64,000 nt of DNA from Ostrea edulis (lineage: Eukaryota): positions 69,068,001 through 69,132,000 of the forward strand of contig NC_079164.1 in NCBI RefSeq assembly GCF_947568905.1, written 5' to 3'. The notes beneath the pieces are model-generated. The model was not told the DNA's origin, did not search any database, and saw only the letters and a list, made by a program, of their open reading frames with translations. Both the position numbers and the translations under genes were made by a program. Of the stretch, positions 6,673-53,132 are shown piece after piece (positions within the stretch are counted from its first letter, which is position 1; the number at the start of each line of letters is the position of its first letter).

Positions 6673-6870
6673 TTTAATATCATTTATTTAACTGAAAATA
6701 ATATATTATGTGTATATGTGTACATGTATATGTATTTATGACTGTATGTACATGTGTGTGTATATGTATGCATATATATGTACATGTATGTATATGTTAT
6801 TGTTTGCTTTTGTAAAAATATTGTGAATATGAAGGTTAATAAAGAAATATTTTTAAAAAACTAAAAAAAA
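5060..6870 (+). mobile_element. 5'-truncated, degenerate L1/Tx1-type LINE (RT C-terminal region plus zf-RVT, 3' UTR, A-rich tail)
   Basis: Broken frames read QWKARKSTPIGKIAVIKTLIVPKMNHLILTL, KDKIKRGTIIQDYKDGGLKMID, WFQFQMLHR...CS...ETLDHLF, ECYLIKDVWFEVEHWL. AATAAA and poly-A at 6838-6870; (TA)n at ~6630-6670. Confidence 0.85.
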
Positions 6871-7138
6871 ACATTAGTCTCTATCAATCTCGATATCAAC
6901 ACCATTCTCTTTTGATGTCGATATTAACATCAGTGTCTATCAAAGTCGATATCAACATTAGTCTCTATCAATGTCGATATTAACATTAGTGTCTATCAAA
7001 GTCAATGTCAACATTAGTCTCTATCAAATCGGTCGATATATTTTCAGTATCATCGATTTCAACAGATGTATTGTCTTGGACATGCGTTATAATTTTGATC
7101 AAAAATATACCCCCGCATTGAAACGAAAATTGAAACAC
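6871..7138. repeat. Right copy of the 28-bp-minisatellite-containing direct repeat flanking the LINE
   Basis: Matches 4716-5056 with fewer 28-bp units. Confidence 0.85.
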
Positions 7139-7668
7139 TTTATGAGTACGGTTCTCTCTCTGGAAAATCTTGTTTGAAACGTTCGTGACGCTTCAAGCAT
7201 AGGAAGCACTTGAATGTACATGTATCTAGTGTCCACCAACACAGGTCACCAGACCGACCAGAACATATATTTATCCAGGTCACAAGTCCGTGATGGTACA
7301 CAGGACACTAGACTGACTTTATATTCTTTATATTCAGGTTCACATTTACCTATGACGGTGTAAAGAAACAAACATCAGTATATCTCATTGGGTACATTCA
7401 CGATAGTTCTCGTAATCAGGTTTTTTTTTTTATACTTTCTACGTTATGCACCAAATAAATACCACTTCTCTTTCGTATGTATATTACCTTTACTTTTAAA
7501 AAAAATGCATTATTTTTCTAGACCGCTTTTTAAATTGCAGACAATAGTTTTATCTGAAATGATTCGAAACGGACAAGGTGTTGAATTTAAACAAAGTTTC
7601 TCAAATGGAACGTTCGCGCGGTTAAAAGATAGAAAATCCCATCTCCTCATTAGCTTTTTCCGCTCAAG

Positions 7669-16039: not shown

Positions 16040-16680
16040 TTCACTCTGCTGATATAAAAAGAAGTGAAAAATGTGAAGATAACAAACAGTGATAAATCTC
16101 GTCAATCCTAAATAGAATACCAAACTGAGAGTAGGGAAAACACGGACCCCTGGACACACCAGAGGTGGGATCAGACAAACACAGACCCCTTGAAACACCA
16201 GAGGTAGGGTCAGACAAACACGGACCCCTGGACACGCCAGAGGTGTCAGAGCAATCGATAGTCAAAATCAGTTTGTGTAGAACGGCCGAACAAATTTGTA
16301 AGTAATTAGTATGAAATACGTGAGACAGCATAGGACCTAAAGCCAGGTTGTATTTGAAAATTAGATCATTATATCGATCATGGAGTTTACAAAATGCCAA
16401 CTTTAAACGAGATTGTTGAAACCCCTGTAACTTCAACGTATTTATCAATAGCCCGTCTCGATTTTGTAATTGATGATACTCAAAACATGCTCTTGCGTAT
16501 CAAATCAGTTGGGAGACTTTAACAATATATGCAGGTTATAATGGGATCTAGAATATGGGAAGCTGACGACGGAGAAGCAGAAATCATCCCGTTTGTCATT
16601 AAATTGAGTTGTTAGTTTGCCGTTAACGTCTTTGTTCAAATTAATATCCAAATATGAAGCAGATGGGGAAGACTCGTTGA
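16040..16680 (-). mobile_element. 5'-truncated Naiad-type Penelope-like element (RT thumb region plus pseudo-LTR with internal 39-bp triplication)
   Basis: - strand: SASYLDINLNKDVNGKLTTQFNDKRDDF..., LKLQGFQQSRLKLAFCKLHDRYNDLIFKYNLALGPMLSHVFHT; pseudo-LTR at 16066-16270. Confidence 0.8.
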
Positions 16681-17019
16681 TAAAACGCCGGTGGTGAATG
16701 AATTAACTCCCTGGTTTCCTTGTGAGCTGTTGAAGGTTGTTGCAAAGTTTGTCCCATCTTGTAGTAGACTCGTACCTTGGACATCCATGACTAAACAAGT
16801 GTAGAATATGTCATCATAGCAATGTTATGGATTATTTAACTACTTCAGTAATGCATTGATATGATTTAATTGACAGGGACAGATACACGATTACACGTTC
16901 CTGGTACTACAGCTTTACTATAGTATCGTTCGATGTATATTGCGTAATTTGCAAATTAACAAATAAAAAGAAAACATTGGTAATATTAAAGAAACAGACT
17001 TTAAAACAACTGCGATGTT

Positions 17020-17223
17020 ACCGTAAGTTGTTTCCTTGATATAGTCGGTACTTTCGAAATGTTGAAAACACACAACACTGGAAGGTGAAGGTTGCCACAA
17101 CTTTCCTGGCTTCTGATCACGCTTAATAGCAATAATCCAGAGCTTCCGAAGGGCATCGTCTTTTGGAAAACGATGTCCTCCCCTGTTTGCGCACCCAGGC
17201 ACACAACAACATGACGAGGGCAT
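17020..17223 (-). CDS. Orphan THAP zinc-finger exon (probably transposon-derived; downstream part disrupted)
   Basis: MPSSCCCVPGCANRGGHRFPKDDALRKLWIIAIKR...WQPSPSSVVCFQHF: CxxxC...W...CxxH pattern of THAP. Phase-1 donor TAC G|gtaaca. The THAP C-terminal AVP box was not found. Confidence 0.7.
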
Positions 17224-17685
17224 ACTACAATACTTTAACTGTATGAAATGTTTACGTATTCGTTTGCTTTGCTAATGGAATCTATTCTGAGCTAGGACCC
17301 CATCGGTAAAGGCGCCACCTACTTCCGCCGCAAGGGAAACAACTGCAAAAATGAATGCCATTGTAATGTCTAGTTGAGGACATCAGCAACATCAGGTAGA
17401 ACCTTTGCGAGAAATGTGTCACAAGAATACCAAAACGGATCAATCATATTGCCGTACAAATAACAGACTCTCTTAATATAATGGAACAATGAAAATCATC
17501 TGATATATGTATGTTATTGGACTGATTCAAGTTCATGACATCAGATCTTTTTCAATGATAAATCAAAAGTATGATAGGCGTCTTGCCAGGGCTCAATATA
17601 CTGAAACATGACTCAATATATCAAAACATCATCCAGTACTCGATACATCAAAACATGACCCAGGATTCGATATAACTTTATGACA

Positions 17686-19010
17686 AACGGGATGATTCCA
17701 ACTTCTCAATCGTCAACTGCCCATAGTTATGTAGCAATAATCTTTTGCGTATCGAATCAGTTGAGAGATGTAGACACCATATGCAGGTGATAATGGAATA
17801 TTGCTACATAAATATGGGTTGATGATGGAGAAACTGAAATCGTCCCGTTTGTAATAAAATCGAGTTGTTAGTTTGCCGTTAGTATCTATTTTCAATAAAA
17901 TATCTCAGTCAGAAGCAGATGTGGAGGGGTTTTTTCGAGTTCACAGGGATATATTGAATCGACATGAATGAAAATTATTATTGTCAATAGATATATTTAA
18001 ATATTGTGTTGAAGACCACAGCAAAAAAAGTTTCTTTTCAATTAGAAGCTTTTGAATATATTCCGCCTTATTAGAATATGAAAACAGGTCAGCTAACAAA
18101 GGAGCTGAATTCGTGCCCATGGAATTCAAAAAGACTACTGTATGACCTGATCACCAAAGACTATAAAAATATTGTCAATTAGAAGCTCCAAGATATTTTT
18201 TTTATTTCAACTTAAGAGTAATTTTGCGTGGAATCAGTGGTGTTTAACAAAATATTTTTTTGGATGATTGATCACTAGATGATTATCTCCTTTTTCCATT
18301 TTGTTGTTGAAGAAGCAACTGTCTGTTGAAAATTCATACGTTTTGATGTTGTTGATTTGAGAAAAGTGTTGTGATTTCAAATTTCCTAAAAGTTCTTTAG
18401 AAGTTTGTAGAATTCACATTTGATTTACACCTCTCGCATATGCTGAGGCACAGTACTTTTGAAATTTCTCCTTCACAACTGCTAATATTTTTGTGAGGTG
18501 CAAAGATGGGGCTTGACAGAACATTTACTGGATCCAGTAATGCATCTTTGTTTATAATGAATTTTGTGAAGTTTAGGAATTCAGTATACGTACGGCAACT
18601 CATATTCATCCACCCCAATGACTGCGATATCAAATGCACATGTGTCTAAAACTGAAGCATGAATTTTAAGAATTTCATCTTTTGAATGAGTACGATTACC
18701 AAATGTGGAATGAACGCCAAGTTTGTTTAAAATACAATTGTAATAATGAGCCTCAGAAACAAAGACAATGTTGTTACAAGCTTTGTCAGCTGAGGACAAA
18801 ACATATTTCTCATGCCATTGTAACCTATCTAATTCTTTTATCACTTCTGATTTACTAAACACAGAAGGATAGATGGTACATACATTTCTTTGGATCTGTC
18901 TTATAGAGAATTTTAATATTGTTCGTATACATGCTTTTAATCCATTTTGACAAGTTATCGAGTTCTTTTTCATATTTAGCCCATCATCTAGCATAGTCAA
19001 TAAATCATGA
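17686..19010 (-). mobile_element. Degenerate Naiad-type Penelope-like RT fragment with a short inverted piece at its 3' side
   Basis: - strand motifs SADKACNNIVFV, MGTNSAPLLADLFSYS, KRDDFSFSII..LCSNIPLSPAYGVYISQLIRYA; 17686-17741 reads LYDKRDDSNFSIVNCP*LCSN on +. Confidence 0.8.
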
Positions 19011-19029
19011 ATTGTACTAACATATCAAA

Positions 19030-19690
19030 CCATGACTGAGGATTTAATATATCAAAACATGACCCAAAACTCAATATATTCAAATATGATACAGGATGTA
19101 ATCTATTGAAATATGACTCAGAACTCAGTATACTGAAACATGACCCAGGACTCAATATATTAAACTATGATACAGAATCCAATCTATTGAAATATGACTC
19201 AGAACTCAGTATACTGAAACATGACCCAGGACTCAATATATTAAACTATGATACAGAATCCAATCTATTGAAATTTGACTCAGTATACTGAAACATGACC
19301 CAGGACTCAATCTATCAAAACATGACCCAGAACTAAATATATTGAAACATGACCCAGACTCATTATAATAAAACATGACACAGGACTCAATATATTGAAA
19401 CATCCAGGACTCAATGTATCAAACCATAAGACTCATTATTTTGAAACAAGACCCAGGAGTCAATATACTGAAACAAGACCCAGGACTCAATATATCGCAT
19501 GACCAGGATTCAATATATCACATGACTCAGGACTCAATATATCACATGACCCAGGACTCAATATACCACATGACCAAAAACTCAATATATCACATGACCA
19601 AGAACTCAATATGCTAAAACATAACCCAGGATGAAACATGACCAAGGGCTCAATATATCACATGGCCTAGGACTCAATATGCTGAAATAT
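19030..19690. repeat. ~27-bp minisatellite (same family as 12365-12710) with an 81-bp higher-order repeat at ~19106-19290
   Basis: catgacccaggactcaatatactgaaa units; the 81-bp block is seen as the repeated 27-aa peptide in ORF 19106..19291. Confidence 0.85.
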
Positions 19691-21253
19691 GGCCATGGCA
19701 ATGCATAACTTGGGATTATACATGGCTTCCTTCGAGATAGTGCTTATAAATCCAGAATATACAAACATACATCACAAGCAGCATCAGAAGCATGCACATC
19801 ATCCATGAAAGTCTGTTTCATTCAGACAACCCAGTGAAAGGAATACCTGTAAAAACTTAAGCCCATTCAAACTCCTCAGAATTACCAATCACCTGCAACA
19901 TCCAAAGCATGAGTGGTAGCAGTTATAATGATTCCTAACCCCTACATCTACATGGGGACTGGGAATGCACTTAATCCATAATGCGGACCCAAAACATATA
20001 CATGTAGGTCACAAGCAGCATAAGAAGAATGACTGGTGATGAATCACTCCAGGACTTGCAAGTTTCTATGAAATAAGCCCTTTCACGATTAAAAAGCGCC
20101 CTCTTGCGGCGCATGCGTATAAACGTCACTGAGTGGCAACGCAGACTTCAGAGATTCTAGAAAACTTGAACGTCAACAATCTAAGGTATTTATACATGTA
20201 TGACTCATTTAATTGTTATGAGGTTTGCTTTATATGTTGTAAGAAAATATGTATTATCACAAGTATGTATACCAAATGTAGGATTGAAGTGTAAACCAAA
20301 GGTGACATAATTTTTACCAACATGTAGGGAAGTAATATTTTTTAATGAATATGTTAAGTATCCAATAAGTATCAATATTACATTATATTTTTACACAACC
20401 CTAACATCCCAACCAGACCAGGTGGTACAAAGTTTTCATAGCAATTAAAAATGCACAACTGTTATACATATATACATATTTTTTATTTTCCAGTTAAGGA
20501 ACCTCAAGGGGCAACATGTAAATATATACAAATACTGTACATATACATATACAAATAAAGAAAGAAGAGATTACATAACACATAGTTGCATCCAAATACA
20601 GTGCCATATATTGTTCAATATAAATTTTCCAGTCCAGTTATATTTAGAATAGATGGATCTTCAGAACATAGTATGTAAATGAATTTTTGTTCATCATTAG
20701 TAAAATATATAATTTTGTGGCAACCAATCAAAGGTTGTAAATTCAACAGCCTTACTAATATGAATCACACCAACTTTTCTGGGTAATTGGAATCTCAAAA
20801 GAAATAAAGTGTGAGATGTATACTATTGTATACAGGTCACAAAATCAACTGGACCTTTCACCTGGCTTTGATACTGAAGAAAACACATTTTAAATTTTTG
20901 CAAAAAGTTAAGATGGCATTATAATGAAATTTATATTTTGATTAAATTTTAAAGATCTGGCCCCAGGATCATGAAATATCTTAATTTTAAGTCAAAATCT
21001 GAATATTGTGATGAAATGATTGAGAAGTCGATCATTCCAAAATAAAATTGCTATTCAATATTGTTTCATTGAATTTCTAGTGTCTACAAATTAAGAGTTT
21101 CAGTTCAAAAATAATGAATGTTTTACATGTGATTGAAATTTTGACTTATTGCAATGTTCTCAAAAAGTGATATTGTACTAGCACCTGTATAAAGTATTCA
21201 ATTTCTACTTTATTGATGTCTTATTCTCTAATTGCTATTATTTCATTCTCAGG

Positions 21254-22868
21254 AGGCTCATGAGAAACAGAGGGATGAAAATGTGCAGGAGGAATGCCAC
21301 AAGAGGTTGTCGTTATATATGCATTCCAATTATTGTGATATACCTTCAGATCATGAACCAGATCATGGAAATGAGACTACAAATGTCATGAAAACCAAGG
21401 ATGCAGGTCAGTTTAAAAAAAAGATGTCACTCGGATTTTGTATTAATAATCAATTTCCTCTATGAAGAATGCATTGGGTTTTTATGTACAAGATTTTAAA
21501 AATTCTTGTGCACTATGTTATATATATATATATCAGCCAGTGTTTCAATTTTTTTTTTTAAAAAACACACTTCATAAAAGACTTTTGAGGGTTCTGCAAT
21601 ATGTATTGTGTTGCATCATATTGAAACCCTGTCATAAACAATTGTATCAAGATATATTTACATTATGAGCTATAGAAAATGTCAAAGAAGTGGTGATGAT
21701 ATGAGTTCTATAATTATAATTACAACATACTCACATAGGGTAGCTCAAAAGTAATACAAATTTATGTACATTCACACACACACACACAGATCTTGGCATG
21801 AATTTAATCGTGATATTTTCATAGTTAGATTTAATTTATTTACTTATAGGTACTTTGTGCGACCCTGACCCTCTTTCAAAAGAGAATGAAAAACTGCAGG
21901 AAGAGTTGCGGGAGACCAAACGTGATCTACAGAGAGAAAGATGGGGAGTTCACAGGATAGCAGACAATGACAGCCTGACAAAGTTCTATACCAGTCTTCC
22001 AACCTTTGCAATGTTTCTCTGGCTGTTCAGCTACCTGAAGGATAAGTGTGAAAGGATGACCTATTGGACTGGGGAGAGCCATACGTTGCCAGGGACAGAC
22101 AGGACAAGAGCGCGTAGGTCCCATCTCCAACCCATAGATCAGCTTCTTGCTGTCCTTATGAGAAACCGTTTGGGTCTTTTTGTCCAGGACATTGCAGAGC
22201 GGTTTTGTATAGCTCCTAGCACATTCTCGAAATATTACACCACCTGGCTATGTCTTCTTCATAAAGAACTGAAATTCCTTAATCCATTTCCAGCCAAAGA
22301 TGTTGTTCAGCGCACAATGCCCTCTCAATTTAAAAAATTTCCTAATACACGTATCATTATAGACTGCACTGAAATATTTATTCAAAAATCATCCAGTTTA
22401 ACAAATCAGTCATTAACATTTTCAAATTACAAGAATCATAATACAGCTAAATTTTTGGTTGGCATCACTCCATCTGGTATTATATCATTTGTTTCTGAGG
22501 GGTGGGGTGGAAAAGTCTCTGACCGACAAATCACAGAAGAGTCAGGCCTATTGGACCTTTTAGAACCAGGTGATAGCGTTATGGCAGATAAGGGTTTCAC
22601 GATAACAGATTTGCTTAAACAGAGAGGATGCTATCTTAATATCCCCCCTTTTTTACGTAATGACCATCAATTTACTGTGGAAGATGTATATAATACTCAG
22701 GAAATTGCACAGCTCCGTATACATGTAGAGCGCAGTATAGGCCGAGTAAAAAACTTTCATATTTTTGATGGTGTTTTGCCATTGTCAATGATACCACTTG
22801 TCAGTAAGTTATTTCAAGTATGCTGTTGGCTCTCGAATCTTGATGTACCCCTTGTGGAAGATAAGTAA
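21254..22868 (+). CDS. Harbinger/ISL2EU DDE transposase (HTH plus DDE); N-terminus apparently missing
   Basis: Exon ~21254-21407 (EAHEKQ...SLYMHSNYC...KDA) spliced to 21850-22868. Catalytic motifs IIDCTE, VMADKGF, RIHVERSIGRVK are intact. A small phase-0 exon ending AAG|gtattt near 20185 has no in-frame ATG and no THAP. Confidence 0.85.
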
Positions 22869-39100: not shown

Positions 39101-42100
39101 ATTTCATATATCTTCAAAATGAAATTACACAAAAGAAATTTGTATGAAATAAAAAACAATAATCCTAGAAATGTTGGTATATATTCTGATCATGATTTTA
39201 CGATCATTCTTAGACCAACTACTGGGTAGATTGAAATTATAATTACAGCAATTCTCATTCTGTTTTATAGAGAATCAATGTAGTAAAAATCATCACGTTT
39301 CTGTAATGGTTGGTCACAAAACTGTGGGGAGAAACCATGAGGATTTCTGTAGTTCCTAGTTTTTATTTCATCTAAACTGGACCAGAAATGACTTAATTTT
39401 TATTTAGAAAAATGGTTTTGAACGAAATTTGTATAATAAAATATTTTATTTGCAAACCAGCACTTGTCTCACCATTGTATATGCCTGGCATATTTGAAAT
39501 TTATTTTCTGCCTAGTCAGTACAGGGATCAAATTATTAATTTAAAGTATGCATTCTTTTTCAATAGTTCATGTAGTTTGTAATATATTTTCCAACTCATT
39601 TATCTATTTTTATTTGAATTCATACCAAATGTAAAAATCATAAATAATTTGAATAATCTGCTTTAAATAATCATTCCAGTAATGAGTTAATAGTGATTAA
39701 TTATGTTGTTTACATCTCATCAGCTGTACCCTAGAAATGATGACAACTTAATATAGGTGTTAATGGGTAGCTACAGCAGTAAGGACTTTATTATTCATGA
39801 AAAAGGAGACAGGTACTTTATCAATACATACACAGTATCTTGTAACGTGATTTCCAATCAATTGACTATGTAAGCCAGACAACTCGGATTGAGATGATGC
39901 TTCTTAGAACATAAAAGTTATTTAGTGTAACAGGGCCCCTCCCGGGCAGTCTGCATTCTAAATCAGTCATTTAAGAAATAAATTTTATATTTCTATTTTA
40001 CATTCTATTTTCATGACGTTATGAATTGTGACACTTTATGCCTGCATACTTCACGAAGAGCGTTAGCACGCCATGAAAAGTACACTGACGTGAAGCATTG
40101 TTCTTCATACCCTCATGCATTTTCAAAAGTGATATTTATTTCTTATATAATTGTATATTTACATTCTATTTTCATTTCTGTTGGAGAATTCCCAGTCGTT
40201 AAAAGAGACATATACTATATTCATCAAGATTCATACGCACATCATTCACATTCATGAGGAAATGGCTACCATTTCAATTGGTAAAGAGTGTTATCAGGCA
40301 AAAACATTGGAAATGTACATACAAAATATAAAAAAATTGTCGTTTTTTCAGCGATAAGGAAACCTTTGTCTTAAACAAGAGCTGACATTCTGTGTACCTG
40401 TTTGTTGCTGTCCGTACTTTCCATCTCCCGTTCTCTTTTCATGGATGAAAGTTCATCCTCTAATGCCTGTATCTGCGTTGCTTTTTCCTGAAGTTTTTCC
40501 TCATTATTTTTCAGATCATTCTCTTTGGAAGCATAGCTCTGATACAAAGCAAACATTTCACTTACTATACAAAAAAGATACCTTTTAAAATGTCAAATTC
40601 AATGTACTAAAAATCACTGCATGCAACGTATATATTGTGAAATCAATAGAACTCGTGGTGGCTCAATTTTCGTGAAATTCATGGGTACCCCTCACCCATG
40701 AATTTACATCCTCTACGAATATACAATATATATTATATATATATATACAATATATATTACAAATATATAAATCCACAAAATTACGTCCCCACGAACCTGT
40801 AAAAATTCAGCAATCCACGAAAATTGGCCTCCAAGAATTTAAATGATTCTACAGTATACCGTATAAGCAGAATTTTTTAAGCGAGGATTTAATTTTGGCA
40901 TTAATAGCGAGGATGCCGAGATCACAAAAATTGAATATCGCTAACATTTTATTCTATATCGTACAGGTACAGCTGTAGGTAATAATTATCTTTCTTGGAA
41001 TTATGAATTGCTAAAATTAGCTCTCCCTAAATATATATACCAATTTTCATGGAAAAATCATTAAATTTGTGTCTCGCTAAAAATTCCACTTACATGGTAC
41101 ATGCAGCCAGCATGAACATGGCATGTTATGATAAGAGTATGTACTTTGCTTGTTATATAAAACCATTAAATGTAAATACCTGCAAAGACTTCTCATGTTC
41201 AATTTGATCTGAGCTTAACTGAAAGTTTAGAGCTCTAATTTCTTGCTTTAATGATTCATTTTCAGAGTTTAATGTCATTTGTGAGTTCAGCTCTTCTTCT
41301 TGATTCTGCTTCAGCGATTGGTTTTCTGTCATGGCCTTCTCTAAGGAGCAATCCAATCTTTCAATATTCTCAGATTTCTCACTCAATTCACTTTCCAGCT
41401 CCCTTACTTTCTCCCGCAGTGAACCCCTTTCTGAATCAATCTCCGAAACTGTCTTTTCTAAAACAAGACAATTATTCTCCGCTTTCTGTTTTTCAATTTC
41501 CCATTCATTGTCTTTTCTCCTCTGTTCCTCTTCCAGGTCAGTCAATTTTGCTCTAAGTTTACAACTTTCACTTTCCTCCAGTTCTTTAAGTGTATCCATT
41601 TCTTGAGAAAGTTTGGTATTCTCCCCTTGTAACTTTTCAATGTTCTCTAATAATGTCTTCTTTTCTTCACTGAGTTTTAGACTTTCATCTTGAACATTCC
41701 GTAGGTTAACCTCACTGTCCTCCCTGTGTTTCTCAAGTCGACCAATCTCTTCCTGTAACTTAGTTAACTGCACTCCTAATTCGTGTTTTTCACTTTCCAA
41801 TTTTTCCTTCTCATTATACACTGTTTCTAACTGTGAAGAAGTGTTTTTCAGCTGTTCTCCTATGTTTTGAAGATCACTTAGAGCTTCTTCTACTTTCACT
41901 TTTAAATCTGTTCTCTCTGCCTCCTTTTGTTTTAAATCTGTCTCAAGTTCTTTAATGTGTTTCTTTTTCTCCTCTTGCATTGATGAAAATTCACACTCCA
42001 AGTCAAACAATTTAGTTTGTACAACCTTTTTCTTTTCTTCTATAAGTGATTTCTCCTTTTGCACTGTCTCGATGTTGTTTTGAAGTTCACTATTTCTTTT

Positions 42101-45100
42101 AGCAAGTTCCTCCATTTTTCTTGACTGTTCCCCATTTTCAGATGAAAGGGCATCATACTTTTCTTTCCACAACTTAGCCTCATTTTGAGTTCCTCTAACA
42201 CTTTCCTCTAATGTTGACACAGCGCTTTGGAGCTCACTAATTTTCTGTGACTGAGAGGACACAATCTTTTCACCCTCTTTAATTTTCTCTTCCAAAGACT
42301 TTTTAACTACTGTGTTGTCTTCATTTGTTTTACAGCTTTGCTGTAGCTCTGCCTCCGTTTTAGACGACTTTTCTCTCCAAGCTGCCATCTCACTATTTCT
42401 TTCAGTGATCTCTTCCTGTAAATTCTTAATTTGGGTCACACATTCCTCCCTTTGAGTTGAGATTTTCTGTAATTCTATCCCAGTATCAGTCAATTTTTCT
42501 TCCAACTCCTTCATTCTTTTTTCCATGTCCGACACTGTGCTATCCTTCTCCATTATCTTCTGTTGCAGATCTTCAGTTACACACTTTGAATTTTGGATTT
42601 CCTCCTGTAAACTATGTTTTTCCTTTTGTAATTTAGATATTTCAGCAGTTTGATTTTTAATGGTTTGTTTGTTTTCAGTTAAATGATTTTGAAGAGTCGA
42701 GTTTTCTGAAGAAATATCATGTAATTTACATTTTACTGCATTGATATTGTCACATAATTTTCCAACGGTAGAGGAAAATTCAGAATTCCCTTCAACAGAT
42801 GGAGCCTGCAAAAAGGAAATTTAAAAGAAACTTTGTTAATCAAGATATAGACCAAAAATAATAATTTTATTATAACAATTAAAATTACTCAACATTTAAG
42901 TATATCTGAGTAAAGTTTGTTCTAAAATGACAAATTCACTTCATACAACCCTTTAAAAGAGGTCTGAACAAAAACTTTCAGTCAGAGTTATTATACAATG
43001 TATCTAAGATTTCTTACACACTAAATCATTGTATACTTATGCTTGCATTTTCAAGGTCCTATAAAATGTCATTATAACTACGTATATATGTCCATGTATA
43101 TTCTGTGTGGCAACCATATGTATGTAGTGGGGGTAGGGAGTAAAGAACAAAAGTATAAGTGTGAATAAGTTTTGTTCATTTTTAACTGTACAGAATGTGT
43201 ACATGTAGTTCATTAAATGTGAGTACAAAAAATCACCTTCCCAATCTGATTTTCCCCCTCCTCCGATACAACCCACTTGATTGAATGAAGCATATTCTCA
43301 ATGATTTTATCCTTTTCTTTGATAACTTGTAGTTTTTCCTCCACCAGTTTCTGGTTTTCTTCCTTGGAATTACTCACTAGTTCATTTTTCTCATTCACAT
43401 GTTTTAGTTCTGTTCTTAGATTTGAGCATTCTTGTATAAGGTCATCATTTTCATGGGAGAGGTGTGATATTTTTTCATTCAGTTTAGAGCAAGTGCTTGT
43501 TTTCTCTTGTAATGATGATTCCAATGCACAGGCTTTAGTTTGACTTTCATGTAACTGTTCAATTTTCTCTTGAATAAGCATCTTTTCAGCATTTAATTGT
43601 TCATTGAGGTCAGAAATTTGAGAACCATGTTCATTTTTCATTTGTTTCACCTGGTTGGTAATTTCAGATAACTGTTTCTCTTTCTCATCCATGCCTATCT
43701 TGTTCGAGCTCAACTCAGATTCTACACTAGCTTTCTCATTCTCAAGCTGCTTGACTTTTTCTACAGCCCTGTCATGTTTAGCCACAAAATCGCTCAGTTC
43801 CGTTCTGATTTCTTTTAACTGTTGTTGATGACTTCCCCTCTCTATTTCCGCATTTTCCTCTGCTTTCTTAATCTTTCTTTCTAAGTCATTAACATTCTCA
43901 CTCCATTTTTGCTCACACTCAGCCTTCTCTTTCTCTGTCTTTTCAATCTGTAGCTTCCTTGATTCACTTTCTTTCTTCATCTCTTCTAACTGCACGTCTA
44001 GTCGGAGTTTCTCCGCTTCCACTTCCTTTAGAGACCCCACCAGTTCCTGCATTTGATTCACAGAGTCCATCTTAGCCGAGGCTTCGTTATCTTTATTGGC
44101 AATCATTTTCTCCACTCTCTGGAGCAGCTCCTGATTCTTAGACTCCAATATTTTTATTTTATTGTCCTGACTAGAAATTAAATCCGACTTTTTCGTATCG
44201 CCCTCTATGCTGACTGAGAGGTCTGACATCAGAGTTCGCACCTACAATACAAAAGCATTTTAGGAATAACTCTTTTGAAAAACAAGAAAAATAATAATTT
44301 GGTGATTCTATTTGCCTCCATAACTGAAAATTTGTTTATCATGCAAAGTTTAGTTAGGGAGATCTGTTGCTGCTCAAAGACATGTTCATGCATGCATATT
44401 TTCACATGAACACAAATTACTCCGGTATTTTGAGTATAAATTGTAGGTTTGTTATTCATGAAAATAAGCATTTTAAAAGATTTTCCAATACATCCCAAAA
44501 GTAATGCTTTGGATAGAACGAACTCAAATTTAGATCAAACCAGATTGCTTGCCTCTTAATATCATACAAACACACATACTCATAGAACTTCTGATGCTCA
44601 TGCTAGCCATCAAGCTCCAGTATGTAATGTTTTAAAAATAAATCTAACCTCAAACTAATTGCAAAAGAATTAACTTTTAAAATATTCATTTACAGGATTT
44701 AGGATACACAACGTATTGGTAAAAAGCCATTAAAACAGGGGACATTTTCTGAGTCAATTCAAATTCCTATGGAGATATCATTGATAAGGGACATGACTTC
44801 TGCTTCTGTGGGATATTATCTTGAATTTGAACAAAAATTGAGGGAATGCATTGGAAGCAATCATATTCACAACTGCTCATATACATTTTTTTTTTATTTG
44901 GCTACTCAAAAGGTACAAATCTTTTATTGTGCTCTGTATTCAAAATCTCTGACTTCAGGTGATTAACAATAAATTTTATGTTTGACAGTCACAGCAGGAA
45001 AATGCATTTCTATACCTGCATCTGAAGATCAGCATTACTCTTCTCAAGCTCAGTAATTTTAGTCCTGAGGCTGCCATGACTGTCTTGATGGGAGTTTTCC

Positions 45101-48100
45101 AGTTTATCCATTTTCTCTTTAAGTGAATACTCTGCCTCCTCCCTTCTCTTTAGATCCTCCTCCAAGCTCCTCTTTTCCCTCTGGTGAACCTCTTCCTTCA
45201 TTTTCATCTCCTTCTCCTTAGATTCAACTTCTAGACACATCCTATCATAGCTGAAACGCAACACAGAAAAGTTGAAGGGTTTCTTTTACACATCGTAACT
45301 TTTCTATTAATTCAAAAGGCAGCAGTTAAACAAAAATTAATTGCATAATCTTCATACATGTATATACGAGAAGCAATCTATTTAATAAACTAACTATCAT
45401 CACTTTTCATCATCCTGATTCTTATACTTCAGTGTTATGACAAGCTATGAAATGTTCTAACTACAAGGACACTGCAAAACAGCACATCATCTGCATTGTT
45501 CATTGTTTACAAACTATGACCATTAAAACTCAACGCTGTCTTCCTTCCTATAAGCCATCTCTGTATAGTATGAGATTAAAATCAGGACTGGTACTCTTTA
45601 TGTGGTGCCCACATAAGCATGCACACTAATAAGAGCAAGCTCAAAGAAGTACTCCTGTAACATTGTTGTGAGGGGGAGTGTCCCACCTTCTCTGCAGTTC
45701 CTTGTTTTCTGTGGTCAGTGTCTCGAGCTGTCCTTTCAGTTCGCTGTGCTGTCCCTGTAGTACCTCCATCTCTGACTTGGTATGGACCACAGACTGCTGC
45801 AGACTCTTCTTCTGCTGTTCCAAGGCATCTATCTGGTCACCATACTCCTGTCGAAGGCTGTTCTCTACGTCAAATGACTCACTGAATGACTCCCCACGGT
45901 GATCCTGCTGTAAATGTGCAAAATATATCACTTTGTTTTGGTTCCATGAGGCCACATAAACAAGTAAACAATGAGAAGAATCTGATGTTTAACATTCTCC
46001 ACAATTTTTTAAGTAATGGAAAAAAAAAAGACAATTTAAATCTTTAAGAATTTTAAGAGTGTCATTTTCTAATGAGCATGTATTTGTATGCATGCACATT
46101 GATGACACTGCCCATACTGACATACTTACCTGTGAACTGACATACCTACCTGTATACTGACATACTTACCTGTGTATTGACATACTTACCTGTGTACTGA
46201 CATACTTACCTGTGTAATGACATACCTACCTGTATACTGACATACTTACCTGTGTACTGACATACTTACCAGTGTACTGACATACTTACCTGTGTACTGA
46301 CATACTTACCTGTGTACTGACATACTTACCTGTGTACTGACATACGTACCTGTATACTGACATACTTACCTGTGTACTGACATACTTACCTGTGTACTGA
46401 CATACTTACCTGAATACTGATATACTTACCTGTATATTGACATACTTACCTGTGTACTGACATACTTACCTGTGTACTGACATACTTACCAGTGAACTGA
46501 CATACTTACCTGTGTACTGACATACTTGCCTGTGTACTGACATACTTACCTGTGTACTGATTTACTTACCTGTATACTGACATACTTACCTGTGTATTGA
46601 CATACTTACCTGTGAACTGACATACTTACCTGTATATTGATATACTTACCAGTGTACTGACATACTTACCAGTGTAATGACATACTTACCTGAATACTGA
46701 TATACTTACCTGTATATTGACATACTTACCTGTGTATACTGACATACTTGCCTGTGTATTGTGTATTATGAGGCTGTTTACAATGGGTTACCTGTATTGG
46801 TATACTGATGAGGCTACTCATGCTGTCTGCACGACTTGGTGGATTCCAGCTGTAGTTACCTTGTTGTGTCCTCCTGCAAAACATGAAATATATATAGAGA
46901 TGATGAAATACTGCATGTTTTCAGATATCTCAACACAAAAAGAAACATACACAAAAAACCTTCGTATATGGCTTTCTTAATATTAATTCTGGGCAGAAAT
47001 GATCCAACACTGTTCATTCAAAAAATATATTGAGTCTTCTAATCAAAATCAGAACCTTTGATCCACTCACTTATTTCACAACACATTTTGAAAGTTGGCT
47101 GGCAATTTAAGTAAGAGGATCATGTGTCTTTTTAAAACAGCTACACAAGCATATACAACCATTAAGTGTTGGAATGTAAATATTGCAATAAAATTACTGA
47201 TAAACTTTTTAATTTCATTCCTTCATTTTCTATTTTGTGCAGTAACTCTAATATTTTCTTTTCCATGAAGATGATAATAAGCATCATTACTTTGCAAATG
47301 ATGGCCAAGCATTGTCCAAGTCATAACCCCTAGCAGCAAGGTCAAACTGGAGTTCACTGAGGTCATACAGGTTACTGATCAATGAGCTGCTTTTGTCATG
47401 ATTTAGCCAGAGTGACTTTGGGTGGAAATAATCACTACAAATATAAATAAAGTCTTGAGAAGAAGGTTAACACTCAGAATGATTGATAATTCATTGACCA
47501 GATTTCATATAAGAAAATGTAATCATATAGTTTTCTTGAATTGGATAACTCTGATTGATCATTAGTTCACAGTAAGTTTCCTACTTTCTAAATTATTACA
47601 GTTTGAACAAAATACACTTCTTTTAAAAACATTTGATACATAGTAAATTCTAAATTGATAATTTGACAAGTTTTAGTCTTTTTGAATTTAAAAATTACAG
47701 TAGATTCCTTATAAGCATACAACATAACATAAATACTTATTTTTACATACAAAAAAAAACCCCAAACAAACAAAACACTGTGAGAATGCACAGCTGTATG
47801 TGCTATATGTTTAAGGTCTTCATGAAAGGATAGATAAAACTTATGTAAAAGCAAGACTTTTGTATTCATGAATAATACATGTACTTTAATGCTTCTCACA
47901 AAATAACAATGAATCTACAGATTTCTATCAATTGCTGAAGCCTCAACAACATATAAGATATTTCTACACAGTAAATATCTCCTGAAATCATGCATTACTA
48001 GATGATGGTTTTTCATTCCTTTATATTACATGCATCTTTATTATAATGTATACACCACATGCTCTTACCAAACACGATTTTTGTAGGTAACAGGCTGGAG

Positions 48101-49967
48101 TATTTTCATAAGGTAATCCAATTGAAAGTATTTATAGAGTTAAGTGCTTTTGGTTAAAATAGTTGTACTTTTGCATTACTAGTCTATAGGATATGTACAT
48201 CACAAAAATAACTCTTACCAAAGCATAGTACACCAAAGCATACATAAAAGCATACAAGTATTGCATTGACTGAAAATGCCAGTTTGAGTACCTTGTAACT
48301 TTTCCATTCATAACACAGGCCTGAATGCTGTCAGCCATTCTGTTGTGCATCAAACAAAACCTCAGAAAAGCCCTTCCTTTTCCTAGTGATGTTTTGTACT
48401 GAAATAAAAGTGTTACAGAACATTAACTTTATTTACAATGTCAAGGCTTGTGAACATGTAATTTCTCCCAAGACATTATGTATTTGCACAGCCCTGCAAT
48501 TTCAGCATGAATGTAGCGCTTTATTCACAGAAACAAAACTTATCAAGATATGAAAATACGCAGTACAAGCCTCCATTACATGTATGTTTTGTGATTCTTA
48601 ACTCTTATATCCACATTCCATCCCATTGTTGACCCAATGATTTTATTGTATTCAATATATACCATCACTAATCTCCTGAACACTCATATCACATATTTAA
48701 TAATGCCATTATTGATTCTCACAAACACTTACATCCCAAATATATTTAATTCAATCATTGAACTCCTTAACACCTACATTCCCGATAGTTTTGACATAGT
48801 TAATTGATCCTATTACTGATCCATTAACATTTACATTGTCAAAAGTTTTGATGTACAAGTAATTAAAACATGATCTTTAATCACTGATTCCCTTAACACT
48901 TACATCCCCGATAGTTTTGACATATTTAATCCCATCATTGATCCCCTTGCTGGATCCCAGACAGTCACAGATATAATCCCAATAATCCTTCTTCTTTCCC
49001 AGTATGGTGTATTTATCTGTTTAAAGATAGGAGTCATTGTTAAACAATGTAATGTATTTCCATGAAATATTGAGGCAATAAAAAGTCATACATATATATC
49101 GTATAAAGTTCGTTTGTTTGTATTTTACATCATGAAGATATGTTCAAAATACCTGAACCCAGTATTTAACATGAGTTAAATTTAACTGACAATTGGATAT
49201 GGCTGGGTATTTTCATGCCATTCCTTATAATGAGCTTGACTGTATTTAGAAATAATTGATGACATTCCAATTTTGAAAAATGAAAATACCTTTCATATCA
49301 GCTCTTAACAAGTATTCCAGCTTGGCACAGAATCTCTGAAGTTGTTGATTATCATCAGTCAGTGGTTGGTGATTGTCTTCAAAGTCTGACTTCATATCAG
49401 CAATACACTCTGATCAAATTACATGTAACAACAATGAATATGTTGTTTTGCTCAGTTTATCAACATTGTTATAGGAAGTGCATATGTACTACATAGCTAC
49501 TTTTTGGGTGCATTGTCCTTGCAGTATATGTCTACCACGGGTCCTTGTAAAAATAAATCCAGAAGTTAAATCCTCCGCTTTTGAGCACAAACCGTGCAAG
49601 GTGCTATATCTGTGTAGGTACTGATTCAATACTTGTTTCATTGGTCCAAACATATTACAGCTGAGCTGTATACATAAATGTATTGCTTGAACCTATCTAG
49701 TTGAAAAAATTTCATGTTGATTCAAATTTTGAAAAGGTTTAGAATGGATTGTATTTTGTGATGGAAGGATTGCGCATGTTTAAACAAAAAGTTCTAAATC
49801 TGCACAATTTTACAATTTCTGTTTTCTCTTACCCTACCTGATATATCTTGTACAATCTTGTCATTCTGAGGGTAGGACACCTGAGTGGGGGATGGTGACA
49901 CCTGCTGCCCTGGGGAGGAGGCAACCTGCTGTTTACCTCTGGTAAAGGGCACAACTGGCACAGACAT
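27964..49967 (-). CDS. FYCO1: FYVE and coiled-coil domain autophagy adaptor (RUN, coiled-coil, FYVE, LIR, GOLD), 21 coding exons, ~1758 aa
   Basis: Exons (transcript order): 49967-49838, 49409-49290, 49016-48904, 48398-48292, 47434-47291, 46873-46792, 45907-45687, 45250-45016, 44241-43237, 42805-41180, 40538-40398, 38458-38387, 37390-37272, 36526-36388, 35303-35230, 33404-33244, 31995-31749, 31268-31113, 30265-30106, 29555-29386 (GC donor), 28018-27964; total 5277 nt in frame. RUN: LGKKKDYWDY, KTSLGKGRAF, FDLAARGYDLDNAWPSFAKRT, WNPPSRADSMSSL. FYVE: WIDEKTVTNCMGC...RKHHCRLCGQVFC...RACNHC. LIR: DEIFHLVSNEE. GOLD: GIYTLFFDNTYSR. Confidence 0.93.
30844..30972. other. Assembly gap (N run) inside a FYCO1 intron
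   Basis: 129 Ns; flanking exons are phase-compatible (2/2), so no exon is required in the gap. Confidence 0.98.
31507..31695. mobile_element. MITE with TACTGTATACAGGG-type TIRs (FYCO1 intron)
   Basis: tactgtatacaggg...ccctgtatacaata inverted ends, plus internal inverted segments. Confidence 0.65.
32554..33105 (-). mobile_element. Non-autonomous Helentron/HINE-like element with ~165-bp internal repeats
   Basis: aacaag... end, repeated aaggtcaaggtca...ggtacc...cttgtcacaaggaatactcatgtgaaatat units, gacggaatgacaga microsatellite, terminal gccccc...gggggcataaaaa hairpin. Confidence 0.7.
33946..34263. mobile_element. TTAA-flanked MITE (Kolobok/piggyBac-type ends) containing a tRNA-derived segment on -
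   Basis: TTAA|GGAGGTATGCTACAC ... GTAGAGTACTACC|TTAA; - strand TAGCTCAGTAGG (A box, 34143-34154) and GGTTCGAGTCC (B box, 34100-34110). The cloverleaf does not pair as a genuine tRNA. Confidence 0.65.
34358..34467. repeat. Hairpin/MITE-like inverted repeat (33-bp arms)
   Basis: aggttatagactttgtatgggaaaatatgacga ... tcgtcatattttcccaaacaaagtctataacct. Confidence 0.75.
35387..35598. mobile_element. MITE (TACTGT...ACAGTA ends), copy 1
   Basis: TIR tactgtggaatcattagaattcgtgg / ccacgaatttaaatgattctacagta; second copy at 40633-40856. Confidence 0.75.
37929..38085. repeat. Imperfect hairpin/MITE-like inverted repeat
   Basis: aaaatgtctttctttgttgtttcatcaggtgatgaaggtagc ... gctaccttcatcatccgatgaaac...aacaaagaaagcatttt. 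Confidence 0.65.
40633..40856. mobile_element. MITE (TACTGT...ACAGTA ends), copy 2
   Basis: Colinear with 35387-35598. Confidence 0.75.
40857..41099. mobile_element. Second MITE family (TACCGTA...ATGGTA ends) abutting the previous MITE
   Basis: taccgtataagcagaattttttaagcgag ... ctcgctaaaaattccacttacatggta imperfect TIR. Confidence 0.55.
46113..46760 (-). repeat. 20-bp minisatellite, 32 units; in the FYCO1 sense each unit is a 5' splice-site consensus (TCAGTACACAG|GTAAGTATG)
   Basis: Units at exact 20-nt spacing 46121-46721 plus one at 46743; 22 contain ATACTTACCTG on +. Confidence 0.95.
48660..48950 (-). repeat. Degenerate ~54-bp tandem copies of a FYCO1 exon 3' end plus donor
   Basis: Unit aacacttacatccccgatagttttgacatatttaatcccatcattgatcccctt recurs with donor-like cores at 48682, 48727, 48772, 48829 and the real donor at 48898-48903. 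Confidence 0.75.
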
Positions 49968-50479
49968 GGCTACCTCTGCTGTCGAAAAGAAAGTGTTACT
50001 TTATATAAATGTATATATGTCTCTAAAGATACTCAAATCCGTATGTATACCTGTAGATCTACAGATAGAGTAGGTGATGACAGCTAGTACGTCATGCTAT
50101 AAATTTATAATTCTAGTCCTTCAGTCAGTGGTAAAAATGGCTAGTTACACTTACTGACTTACACTAACTTAAAAGTACAGGGAAGTATAATACATTTTAT
50201 TGCATCAAACATACAAAGACATCCTAACATTTTGATGAAATACAGAAATAGCGTACAAAAGATGAACTTACTACCACGAAATTATTGTGTAAATCTTCTA
50301 TTAATCCTTATTTCCACAAATGATGTGATACAGAATCAAGGTCGAGGAATACATAATGCAGGACATTTTCAACGTTCACATGATGCTTATTTTGCTGGGC
50401 GTAACCCTTTCTGACTAAACATCAAATATCTATTATTACCTGTATATTTCTACTCCTGTAATAATAAAAATACGAAATT

Positions 50480-51000: not shown

Positions 51001-51695
51001 GTCTAGACTTGCTCAAGTCTCTATATAAGTATATTTTGTACAGTATTTATTACTTTATCATTTCGTCCAAATTTTACCGTGTTTCAGAAATCTAAATTTT
51101 TGCTCTCTATCGTACTTAAATGTCATGTTCGATGTGATATTTATCAAGAAATAGAAAAATATGTTTCCTCAATTATCTCTCCTTCCCTTAATCCTGTCCA
51201 CTCACGTTGTTTGAACCTCAGATGCTCATATGATAAAGATCTGAGTTTATTCATGCAAACCATCATTCCCAGAACTAGGGTGAAACCACAATGAATGTTT
51301 ACGTAGGAATATATGTAGATATATTTTGTAAAAGTTTTCTTTTCAAAAGCCAGAAGGGTACAGTTTGTCAAATCAGTATGTATAAAGCATCCTCATTTAG
51401 TGTAGATTCAAGTTTGCCTATACTATACATATTGTGCCTCCCGTGGTCTTAATGAGGCAGAGGAGTTTAGGGAAATTCTTCTCAAGAAACAATACTGATT
51501 TGTCAAATTGATTATGATATTATGCTAGAGCTCTATGGAGATTTATCGTTCCCGTGACCAGAGTGGGACTAAAATACCATGCTCATACACAACATGTATT
51601 TATGCCTCTTTGACAATATATATGATGAGCATTACTAAAAATAAGTGCAACCAGTATTAACGGTGCAATACAAAAATGTATTTCTTTTCGATAGA

Positions 51696-53132
51696 ATGGA
51701 GTCCAAATCTTGGCAAGATTCTCTTTCGTTAAAAGAGGCACTTTTGCGCATGCTGGAGAATGAGATATCCTATGACGTCATATTCCATATTGGTGAGAGA
51801 TCAGATGAAGTTCGCAGTCATAGTTTTATTCTGACTGCGCGTAGCCATGTTTTTCAAGCTATGCTTGAAGGACCAATGATAGACCGTGATCCAAATGGAA
51901 GGGTGTTAGTTTCTTTACCAGAGGTGGACGTAGAAATGGTTCAGTGCTTTCTCAGGTTTGTGTATAATTTTAGTCAAAGATGTCTTAATGGTTAAACAAT
52001 TACGATCATGTGAGATCAAGTTCCAAAAAGGGTTTATTTTCAGAACAGCAGGAATCAAATATGATACTTTATTCACGTACTTCCATATTTGTAATTTTGT
52101 AGATATCTGTACACAGACGATATTGAACTTTCAGAAGATAACGTGATGCCATTGTTGTATTTGGCCAGAAAGTACTTGGTTCAAACCCTGATTGATAAAT
52201 GTCAGAATTTTATAAAAGACGCAAAACTTTTGGAACCCGAAAACTCGGTAGAAATATACCACCAAGCTTTCCTGTTTGATCTAGGAGATCTGATGGCCGA
52301 CAGCATGAAAACAATCAATCAAAGAACAAAACAGTGCCTTGAATCCGACTCCTTCCTGACACTTCCACAGGAGTGTGTTCGAATGATCATTGCAGACGAT
52401 CATCACCAGGTGGAAGAGGATGTAATTTATAAAAACGTTATAAGATGGTGCGAAGAAGAATGCATAAGAAGAGGTGTAAGCGGAAGTGACGAGGTGATCC
52501 GCGAGATTTTAGGAGATATTTTATATGAGATAAGATTTCCAAATATGAATATTGCTTTCTTTCAGTCGTCCATCGAGAAGCGACGTATTTTGACGGAAGC
52601 TGAGAAGAAAGAAGTAAAGGATTTGCTGAAAGGTGTGAATAGGAATACCTACCGAGGGCTGTTTAAATGCAAACCCAGGAATATTTGTCAAAGAGTGATG
52701 AGAATGGAATTACATGAAGAAGAGATGGTGCTAGACGACATAGAAAATGCAATTGCTTTTGAGTCTTCCGTAGAATGTGTACTACATGGAATAGTAACTT
52801 ATGGATTAAGTCATGCAGTAGCGAAGTTTACATTCTACGTTAAGGTTATGGATGACGAGGATAAAATTTTAGTAAATGAGGATTTTTGTATGGAGTCTGA
52901 TTCAAAAACTCAGTTATACAATGCCAAATTTCAAAAAGCTGTAGAGGTTGTGCCAGATCGAAAATACCGTGTCAGTTTGACTTTGGACGATACCAACTGG
53001 TCGTGGAAAGGAATATATGGTCGCCATTCAGTCCCTTTTAAGGACGGTGAGGTTAAATTTACAGACTGTAGTGGAGAAGCTGAGGAAACCGGCATGCTGG
53101 GAGGCCAGATTCCCGGATTACTTTTATCATGA
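51696..53132 (+). CDS. BTB/POZ-BACK-PHR domain protein (BTBD1/2/3/6-like family), 2 coding exons, 429 aa
   Basis: Exons 51696-51955 and 52103-53132 (AG|gtttgt ... tgtag|A). BTB: DVIFHIG...SHSFILTARSHVFQAML...FLRYLYTD; ARKYLV; BACK: EEDVIYKNVIRWCEEEC...LYEIRFP; PHR-like C-terminus ending GGQIPGLL. Confidence 0.9.

What the first reader, a model, noticed from the sequence alone, without database searches (positions are those of the whole stretch)
46113..46791. Intronic array of 32 5' splice sites, 22 of them perfect U1 snRNA complements, in FYCO1
Seen: the 884-nt intron 45908-46791 is ~70% filled by a 20-nt repeat whose FYCO1-sense unit is TCAGTACACAG|GTAAGTATG. I count 22 of 32 units with the exact 11-mer CAGGTAAGTAT. 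The authentic donor (CAG|GTAACC, exon end 46792) is weaker than every perfect unit and lies only 40 nt from the first array donor (GC type, 46752). The unit resembles the exon end (TCAGTATACCAATACAG|gtaa), suggesting it grew from the donor itself. Using the first or second array donor adds 40 or 62 nt (frameshift), and later ones include an in-frame TAA. Established: AUACUUACCUG is the U1 5' end; U1 binding defines donors and suppresses premature cleavage/polyadenylation. Inference: this could be a U1-loading platform or sponge, a repeat-length-tunable poison-splicing switch for an autophagy adaptor, or a neutral expansion that splicing must somehow ignore. Any of these is unusual.
Basis: partly seen in the sequence, partly recalled or inferred. 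Interest (0 to 1): 0.8.

Follow-up and report, generated by a model that had tools for sequence, protein, structure and literature searches.

The report
Splice-donor minisatellite in oyster FYCO1 intron
An intron of the flat oyster's FYCO1 gene is three-quarters filled by 32 head-to-tail copies of a 20-base unit that each carry a near-perfect splice-start signal, but this is one more case of a known, fast-evolving kind of repeat that is common in this genome, and the assembled mRNA still uses the original splice site.

Summary
On the minus strand, 46115-46758 holds 32 units of 20 nt. Twenty-two carry the exact 11-mer CAGGTAAGTAT, the full complement of the U1 snRNA 5' end. The array sits in the 884-nt intron after an 82-nt exon of Ostrea edulis FYCO1-like.

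It is a "mirage"/F7-type splice-donor minisatellite.
- The intron opens with a decayed 40-nt copy of the exon end plus donor, and the 20-nt units resemble the exon end.
- The same exon border in Saccostrea cucullata carries an undecayed 36-nt x9 array made of that species' own exon end plus donor.
- S. echinata, a pearl oyster and a scallop have no array there, so the arrays are young and species-specific, not conserved.

A 3.8-kb spliced RNA contig joins the authentic donor (46792) directly to the acceptor (45907). None of the six annotated protein isoforms uses an array donor. Every array donor would give a premature stop.

Best reading (about 0.7): a tolerated by-product of slippage at the exon border, bypassed because the first donor after the short exon is chosen. 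Low-level array-donor use followed by NMD is not excluded.

This scan has already reported the same class at least nine times elsewhere in this genome. The class is known; the new points are the perfect U1 match and the parallel array in a second oyster.

The parts
46792..46873 (-). 82-nt FYCO1 exon (K)RTQQGNYSWNPPSRADSMSSLISIPIQ; its last 24 nt, AGCCTCATCAGTATACCAATACAG, seeded the repeat
   Evidence: RNA contig piece 46792-46874 with GT..AG joints; identical to O. edulis XP isoforms
46786..46794 (-). Authentic 5' splice site CAG|GTAACC (positions -3 to +6); 8.2 bits, 7 bp with U1, -8.5 kcal/mol
   Evidence: The RNA contig's match ends at 46792 and its overhang is the reverse complement of the exon at 45907; scores
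46736..46775 (-). Decayed 40-nt copy of exon end plus donor (AGCCTCATAATACACAATACACAG|GCAAGTATGTCAGTAT), offset exactly 40 nt from the original at 46815-46776; its donor is the GC-type first array site
   Evidence: Shared 8-mer AGCCTCAT plus ACAGG at the same offset; exon end aligns to array units 18/19 with one 2-nt gap, P about 0.01-0.02 against window controls
46115..46758 (-). 20-nt x32 minisatellite with sense-strand unit CAG|GTAAGTATGTCAGTACA; 22 perfect 11-nt U1 complements, 30 units of at least 8 bits; variant map HDEICJFGBKALFCADEAABMAAACBNAGBOP, more uniform toward the 3' end
45908..46114 (-). Non-repetitive 3' part of the intron, with T-run and acceptor region
   Evidence: Sequence; acceptor context
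45902..45910 (-). Tandem acceptor cag|CAG|GAT (NAGNAG). The RNA contig uses 45907; annotated isoforms X1 and X2 differ by this one Gln
45687..45907 (-). Downstream exon QDHRGESF...KELQR(S), donor AAG|GTGGGA

Best explanation
This is a young, species-specific 'mirage'-type minisatellite. Replication slippage or unequal exchange duplicated the exon end plus its 5' splice site into the intron: first as a unit of about 40 nt, then as a shortened 20-nt derivative that expanded to 32 copies. Because the seed was a splice donor, every unit carries one. The units keep a GTAAGTAT form close to the donors of related bivalves, whereas the working donor now reads GTAACC. The array has no conserved function. 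The spliceosome uses the first donor after the 82-nt exon (position-first or exon-definition choice, as shown for human F7), so normal mRNA is made. Any use of array donors gives a premature stop and would be removed by NMD. Shown: the array's anatomy, its relation to the exon end, the authentic junction in mRNA, and presence/absence across species. Inferred: slippage as the origin, the position-first choice, and NMD of by-products.
For: (1) Anatomy: a decayed 40-nt copy of exon end plus donor lies at the intron start, and the units resemble the exon end. (2) Saccostrea cucullata has, at the same border, a textbook array of 18-nt x2.4 and 36-nt x9.2 units that are its own exon end plus donor. 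S. echinata, Pinctada and Pecten have none in this intron. (3) Repeat copies carry each species' own exon spelling (AGCCTCAT in Ostrea, AGTCTTAT in Saccostrea), which indicates independent origin or local homogenisation. (4) A direct repeat AGTATAC (exon -15..-9) / AGTACAC (intron +4..+10), 18 nt apart, exists in the array-free S. echinata sequence and matches the 18-nt unit of S. cucullata. This offers a slippage seed that explains recurrence at this border. (5) A six-exon RNA contig joins 46792 to 45907. The six annotated O. edulis isoforms and the annotated S. cucullata models use the first donor. (6) No unusual RNA structure is predicted (z = +0.65). (7) The class is documented and reported not to disturb splicing (PMC1557585, PMC3087553, PMC3902484). 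(8) A second border-spanning duplicate lies in this window. In five bivalve FYCO1 genes, 9 of 45 arrays touch an exon border against 3.8 expected (P about 0.008).
Against: In F7 minigenes, pseudo-sites made perfect (CV 100) were used at about 70-90% (PMC1557585). Perfect array donors might therefore be expected to compete here, and contigs cannot show minor or NMD-degraded forms. The RNA contig comes from a run labelled as another organism and is about 1.3% diverged, so whether that animal has the array is unknown. The 11-mer core varies less than the spacer (9 of 341 versus 27 of 279 cells). That could hint at constraint, but the number of distinct mutation types is similar (5 versus 7). The similarity of the exon end to the units is only moderately significant (P about 0.01-0.02). 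Two arrays at one border in two genera could also reflect selection.
Confidence: 0.72

Rival explanations
1. Unproductive-splicing valve: a sizeable share of FYCO1 pre-mRNA is spliced at array donors, yielding stop-containing transcripts that NMD destroys. Array length or U1 availability would then tune FYCO1 output.
For: All array donors lead to a frameshift or an in-frame TAA. They bind U1 far better on paper than the authentic site. In F7 minigenes perfect pseudo-sites were used at about 70-90%. IFI6 and CBS use their two most proximal pseudo-sites.
Against: The only transcript evidence shows the authentic junction. No annotated isoform or truncated product with array-derived sequence was found; this is a weak negative. 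The array is absent in S. echinata, Pinctada and Pecten, so it is not a conserved control. The nearest strong GT donor is 62 nt downstream, because the +20 copy is destroyed and the +40 copy is GC type.
Confidence: 0.15
2. U1 landing platform: U1 snRNPs bound along the array help define the short upstream exon (like engineered exon-specific U1s that bind downstream intron sequence) or suppress premature cleavage/polyadenylation. This would have allowed the working donor to decay to GTAACC.
For: There are 22 full 11-nt U1 complements at 20-nt spacing. U1 snRNAs targeted to intron sequence downstream of a defective exon rescue exon skipping (PMC3349419, PMC5095682; abstracts). The core is less variable than the spacer. 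The working donor differs from the likely ancestral GTAAGTA/GTTAGTA form kept in the units and in relatives.
Against: There is no conservation across oysters. The authentic donor is already among the stronger donors of this gene. The intron is only 884 nt, so telescripting is hardly needed. Many such arrays in this genome have ordinary donors (earlier notes). Real donors, unlike ExSpeU1 targets, would be spliced.
Confidence: 0.07
3. Assembly artefact: the array, or its length, is a mis-assembly of repeated reads.
For: Only one long-read assembly was available, and L003 is the same record as the window. Short-read contigs break inside the array.
Against: An independent DNA run (a 2025 study) gives a contig identical over 46715-49561 that runs into the first units. 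Sixteen DNA runs from several studies hold at least 93% of the sampled words of 41156-46900. The variant-unit map is non-periodic, as in real minisatellites.
Confidence: 0.02

Closest known systems
Human F7 intron 7 VNTR (37-bp unit whose first element spans the exon 7/IVS7 border)
   Same: A tandem array reiterates the donor in the sense strand directly after the exon, and only the most upstream donor is used in normal mRNA (PMC1557585; here).
   Different: F7 pseudo-sites are identical to the authentic one (CV 74), with 5-9 copies. Here there are 32 copies that are stronger than the authentic donor, the border copy has decayed, and the expanded unit is a shortened 20-nt derivative.
Human IFI6 (6-16) intron 2 and CBS intron 13 minisatellites
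   Same: Many reiterated donors follow the authentic one: 25 pseudo-sites in 6-16 and 15-20 repeats in CBS (PMC1557585 introduction; Turri et al. 1995, cited).
   Different: [quoted passage not shown] Here no use of array donors was seen, and any use would be out of frame or stop-containing.
Amphioxus 'mirage' minisatellites (Adh3, TnC, globins, PGBD5)
   Same: Tandem duplications span exon-intron borders, recur in many genes of one genome, are length-unstable, and do not disturb normal splicing (PMC3087553, PMC3902484). Bivalves show the same genome-wide habit.
   Different: The phylum differs (Mollusca). I found no paper describing the phenomenon in bivalves. Here the unit is a perfect U1 complement.
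Exon-specific U1 snRNA targets and natural intronic U1 sites
   Same: U1 binds in the intron downstream of an exon (PMC3349419, PMC5095682).
   Different: Those are engineered, single, non-donor targets with demonstrated effects. Here binding and effect are untested, and the sites are true donor sequences.

Membership tests
Exon-border ('mirage'/F7-type) splice-donor minisatellite | Head-to-tail array in the intron immediately downstream of a donor | tested here: met
   20 nt x32 at 46115-46758, starting 33 nt after the donor
Exon-border ('mirage'/F7-type) splice-donor minisatellite | The first element spans the exon-intron border (unit = exon end + donor) | tested here: met
   Met in decayed form. 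A 40-nt copy, AGCCTCAT...ACAG|GCAA, lies at 46775-46736 against the original at 46815-46776. Units align to the exon end 18/19 with one gap, P about 0.01-0.02. The undecayed form is seen at the same border in S. cucullata.
Exon-border ('mirage'/F7-type) splice-donor minisatellite | Units reiterate donor-like sites on the sense strand | tested here: met
   30 of 32 units score at least 8 bits on the gene strand and none on the opposite strand
Exon-border ('mirage'/F7-type) splice-donor minisatellite | Normal mRNA uses the most upstream (authentic) donor | tested here: met
   RNA contig joins 46792 to 45907; annotated isoforms agree. Minor forms are not assessable.
Exon-border ('mirage'/F7-type) splice-donor minisatellite | Copy-number instability or polymorphism | not testable with these tools
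   Only one long-read assembly was available and short-read contigs break in the array. Between species, turnover is shown.
AS-NMD (poison) splicing switch | Alternative sites give premature stops | tested here: met
   Extensions of +40/+62 nt are frameshifts, there is an in-frame TAA at the second array donor, and all frames have stops
AS-NMD (poison) splicing switch | The alternative junctions are actually made | tested here: inconclusive
AS-NMD (poison) splicing switch | Conservation of the poison element | tested here: not met
   Absent in S. echinata, Pinctada and Pecten; a different unit in S. cucullata
Functional U1-recruiting element (exon-definition enhancer / telescripting) | Sequence complementary to the U1 5' end | tested here: met
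   22 exact 11-mers, -15.2 kcal/mol
Functional U1-recruiting element (exon-definition enhancer / telescripting) | U1 occupancy and an effect on exon inclusion or polyadenylation | not testable with these tools
   Needs CLIP and minigenes
Recursive splice sites | Polypyrimidine tract + AG directly joined to GTAAGT | tested here: not met
   The units read ...GTCAGTACACAG|GTAAGT with no pyrimidine tract

The most novel reading that the evidence does not exclude
The array is a natural experiment showing that in oysters the position of a donor (first after the exon) overrides even 22 perfect 11-bp U1 complements only 62-660 nt downstream. That would differ from mammalian F7 minigenes, where perfect pseudo-sites win. 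Alternatively, bound U1s on the array help define the 82-nt exon, which let the working donor decay from GTAAGTA to GTAACC. A further possibility is that strong U1 or spliceosome occupancy itself promotes tandem duplication at exon borders, which would explain why two oysters made arrays at the same border.
Probability: 0.1. Interest if true: 0.6.

Novelty: new member of a known kind. Interest (0 to 1): 0.3.

Why it matters
As a single locus it matters little: it is a tolerated repeat in an autophagy-adaptor gene. It has two practical uses. First, it is an extreme natural test case for 5' splice-site choice. The working donor is about 4.7 bits and 6.7 kcal/mol weaker than 22 perfect competitors just downstream, so junction counts under NMD block would show whether position or U1 affinity rules in a mollusc. 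Second, the S. cucullata array together with the array-free S. echinata intron gives a before/after pair for how border-spanning minisatellites arise, with an 18-nt-spaced AGTA-AC direct repeat as the likely seed. That bears on the genome-wide excess of such repeats in bivalves, which I did not find described in the literature searched.

Tried and rejected
- **Fish origin.** I first assumed a fish gene. Run labels, protein hits and an identical record showed Ostrea edulis.
- **Word search with the 552-aa coiled-coil exon.** It found nothing. Coiled-coil words swamped it and the length filter excludes the 1788-aa protein. Pfam on exon fragments gave only sub-threshold RUN, FYVE and GOLD_2 hits, so I used the exhaustive search.
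- **Strict local alignment of the exon end to the consensus unit.** Not significant (P about 0.12). Only gapped alignment to real variant units and the 40-nt offset copy gave support.
- **Masking of donors by RNA structure.** Rejected (z = +0.65).
- **Recursive-splice-site array.** Rejected, because the units have no pyrimidine tract.
- **Constraint on the U1 core.** The core has fewer variant cells, but a similar number of distinct mutation types (5 versus 7). I do not count this as evidence.
- **Truncated products carrying array-derived peptide.** None found, but no short O. edulis products were in the database at all, so this is a weak negative.
- **Read laying.** I therefore did not send the array and laid only the donor-side flank, 46715-50000, which holds two units. 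As a result, direct joints from array donors to 45907 could not be examined. All runs were contigs, so levels and rare forms are unknown. X17 and X18 gave no contigs on this flank.
- **Operator restrictions.** The N run at 30844-30972 was left alone.

Full report
**Observation**

Read on the minus strand, 46758-46115 is a clean 20-nt tandem array: TRF gives period 20, 32.1 copies, 89% matches and no indels. The consensus unit is CAG|GTAAGTATGTCAGTACA.
- Twenty-two of 32 units carry the exact 11-mer CAGGTAAGTAT, and the window has no other copy on either strand.
- The 20-mer with up to 3 mismatches matches 32 times, against none in 100 shuffles.
- The array fills 73% of the 884-nt intron 46791..45908.
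- The upstream exon is 46873-46792 (82 nt) and ends in a phase-0 donor CAG|GTAACC.
- Array donors would extend the exon by 40, 62, 82 ... 662 nt. The in-frame read-through stops at a TAA in the second array donor (ORF 46729-46920), and all three frames of the unit contain a stop every 60 nt.

**Gene and organism**

The minus strand carries RUN, long coiled-coil, FYVE and GOLD_2 fragments. An exhaustive protein search with the largest exon returned "FYVE and coiled-coil domain-containing protein 1-like" of Saccostrea cucullata (57% identity) and of Pecten maximus. A word search with the Saccostrea protein returned the Ostrea edulis protein. It is identical to the window's exons in this region, and its genomic record is base-identical to the window over 4 kb. 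The window is therefore O. edulis (assembly GCA_947568905.1) and the gene is FYCO1-like.

**Donor strength**

I used a textbook 9-position matrix (my own approximation) and U1 duplex energies.

| Site | Bits | kcal/mol with U1 |
|---|---|---|
| Authentic donor | 8.2 | -8.5 |
| Perfect array units | 12.9 | -15.2 |

Even the variant units pair better than the authentic site. The authentic site is not weak in context, however. Among the six donors of this gene supported by the RNA contig (2.9-10.7 bits), it ranks second.

**Transcript evidence**

I therefore did not send the array and laid only the flank 46715-50000.

One run (X19, labelled organism B, about 1.3% diverged) holds a 3812-nt contig that joins six exons with GT..AG introns. 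Its match ends exactly at 46792. Its 30-letter overhang is the reverse complement of CAGGATCACCGTGG..., the exon starting at 45907, with two SNPs. The dominant mRNA therefore joins the authentic donor to the acceptor and skips the whole array.

The six annotated O. edulis isoforms differ elsewhere or at the CAG|CAG tandem acceptor (Q232 present or absent). None involves the array.

An independent DNA run gives a contig identical over 46715-49561 that enters the first units, and 16 DNA runs hold the locus. The array is therefore not an artefact, although its copy number is unverified.

Limits of this evidence: contigs drop rare forms, the array status of the X19 animal is unknown, and junctions from array donors could not be examined directly.

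**Origin**

The exon's last 24 nt plus donor (AGCCTCATCAGTATACCAATACAG|GTAAC, from 46815) recurs exactly 40 nt downstream as AGCCTCATAATACACAATACACAG|GCAAG (from 46775). This shares the 8-mer AGCCTCAT and the ACAGG junction.

Real array units align to the exon end 18/19 with one 2-nt gap. Only 1 of 96 other GGTAA sites in the window scores as high. A stricter ungapped test was not significant.

The unit map (HDEICJFGBKALFCADEAABMAAACBNAGBOP) shows a repeated DE pair and a more homogeneous 3' half, as in ordinary minisatellite turnover.

The 11-mer core has fewer variant cells than the spacer (9/341 versus 27/279). The number of distinct mutation types is similar (5 versus 7), so I do not read this as constraint.

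**Orthologous loci**

| Species | Same intron |
|---|---|
| S. cucullata | Textbook border-spanning array: 18 nt x2.4 and 36 nt x9.2, unit GAGCAGTCTTATCAGTATAACAATACAG\|GTCAGTTT (that species' own exon end plus donor); 8 GT donors |
| S. echinata (congener) | No array |
| Pinctada imbricata | No array |
| Pecten maximus | No array |

The annotated S. cucullata protein uses the first donor. The Ostrea border copy and the Saccostrea units each carry their own species' exon spelling (AGCCTCAT versus AGTCTTAT). This points to independent origin or local homogenisation, not to a conserved element.

In the array-free S. echinata sequence, a direct repeat AGTATAC (exon -15..-9) / AGTACAC (intron +4..+10) lies 18 nt apart. 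That is exactly the 18-nt unit seen in S. cucullata. I infer that the conserved Ser-Ile codons AGTATA, together with a GT(A/T)AGTA donor, form a slippage seed, which explains recurrence at this border.

The Ostrea units (GTAAGTAT) look more like relatives' donors (GTTAGTA, GTAAGTA) than the present working donor (GTAACC) does. The working donor probably changed after the duplication.

**Known class**

Minisatellites whose first unit spans an exon-intron border are described for human F7, IFI6/6-16, CBS, LMNB2 and PDGF (PMC1557585; Turri et al. 1995, cited). In amphioxus they are called "mirages" and are reported not to disturb splicing (PMC3087553, PMC3902484).

In F7, the most upstream donor wins against pseudo-sites up to CV 91. 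Pseudo-sites made perfect (CV 100) were used at about 70-90%. That result is the main reason I keep a 0.15 rival in which array donors are used and the products are lost to NMD.

RNA folding gives no sign of masking (z = +0.65).

**Commonness in this genome**

Earlier notes of this scan report the same class at least nine times elsewhere in this genome, with follow-ups calling it a tolerated by-product. I tested part of this myself.
- The window holds a second case: a perfect 39-nt x2.1 duplicate whose first copy spans the predicted exon end ...LIALEWYK|gtaaga of the SLC1A-like gene.
- In five bivalve FYCO1 genes, 9 of 45 arrays touch an exon border against 3.8 expected under random intronic placement (P about 0.008; exon borders are approximate).
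- The scallop gene alone has an acceptor array (30 nt x34) and two donor arrays (23 nt x10, 40 nt x42) at exon borders.
- I found no paper describing this in bivalves.

**Verdict**

It is a new member of a known kind of repeat. Three things are notable: the perfect U1 complementarity of its units, the use of a weaker upstream donor in the assembled mRNA, and an independent array at the same border in another oyster. It is not conserved, and nothing indicates a function.

Noticed in passing
window 11924-12005 (+): A perfect 39-nt x2.1 duplication, AGTGGTACAA|GTAAGAGTC..., whose first copy spans the predicted exon end (...LIALEWYK) of the SLC1A-like gene. This is a second, very young border-spanning repeat in the same window. 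The exon border is predicted from the ORF, not RNA-verified.
   Followed up: partly
window 45902-45910 (-): Tandem acceptor cag|CAG (NAGNAG). Annotated O. edulis isoforms X1 and X2 differ by this single Gln (Q232); the RNA contig uses 45907.
   Followed up: yes
L002 4609-4960 (Saccostrea cucullata FYCO1-like): The same exon border carries an 18-nt x2.4 plus 36-nt x9.2 array of exon end plus donor. The congener S. echinata (L004 about 2094-2685) has no array in this intron.
   Followed up: yes
L001 (Pecten maximus FYCO1-like) 6249-7281, 13764-13985, 16086-21006, 21153-22787, 23432-26387: The scallop gene is riddled with large intronic minisatellites: an acceptor-type array (30 nt x34) abutting an exon start, donor-type arrays (23 nt x10; 40 nt x42) starting on exon ends, and a 24-nt x199 array (GACAG|GTTTGT).
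   Followed up: partly
L004 3820-5516 and L005 22035-23205: A 146-nt satellite in a FYCO1 intron of S. echinata is homologous (about 72% over 285 columns) to one in a FYCO1 intron of Pinctada imbricata. This looks like a widely shared bivalve satellite family. It is unrelated to the 145- and 151-nt arrays in the window.
   Followed up: partly
window 12388-12710, 17592-17674, 19031-19680: One 27-nt repeat family (GACTCAATATAT..AAAACATGACCCAG) forms arrays at three places within 7 kb, which suggests a dispersed element carrying an internal minisatellite.
   Followed up: no
window 2318-2892 (+): A 23/46-nt array (about 25 copies) with a weak donor-like TAA|GTGAGT motif. I saw no adjoining exon.
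   Followed up: no
window 51645-53132 (+): The neighbouring gene, head-to-head with FYCO1, encodes BTB + BACK + PHR domains (Pfam hits above the curated cut-offs).
   Followed up: no
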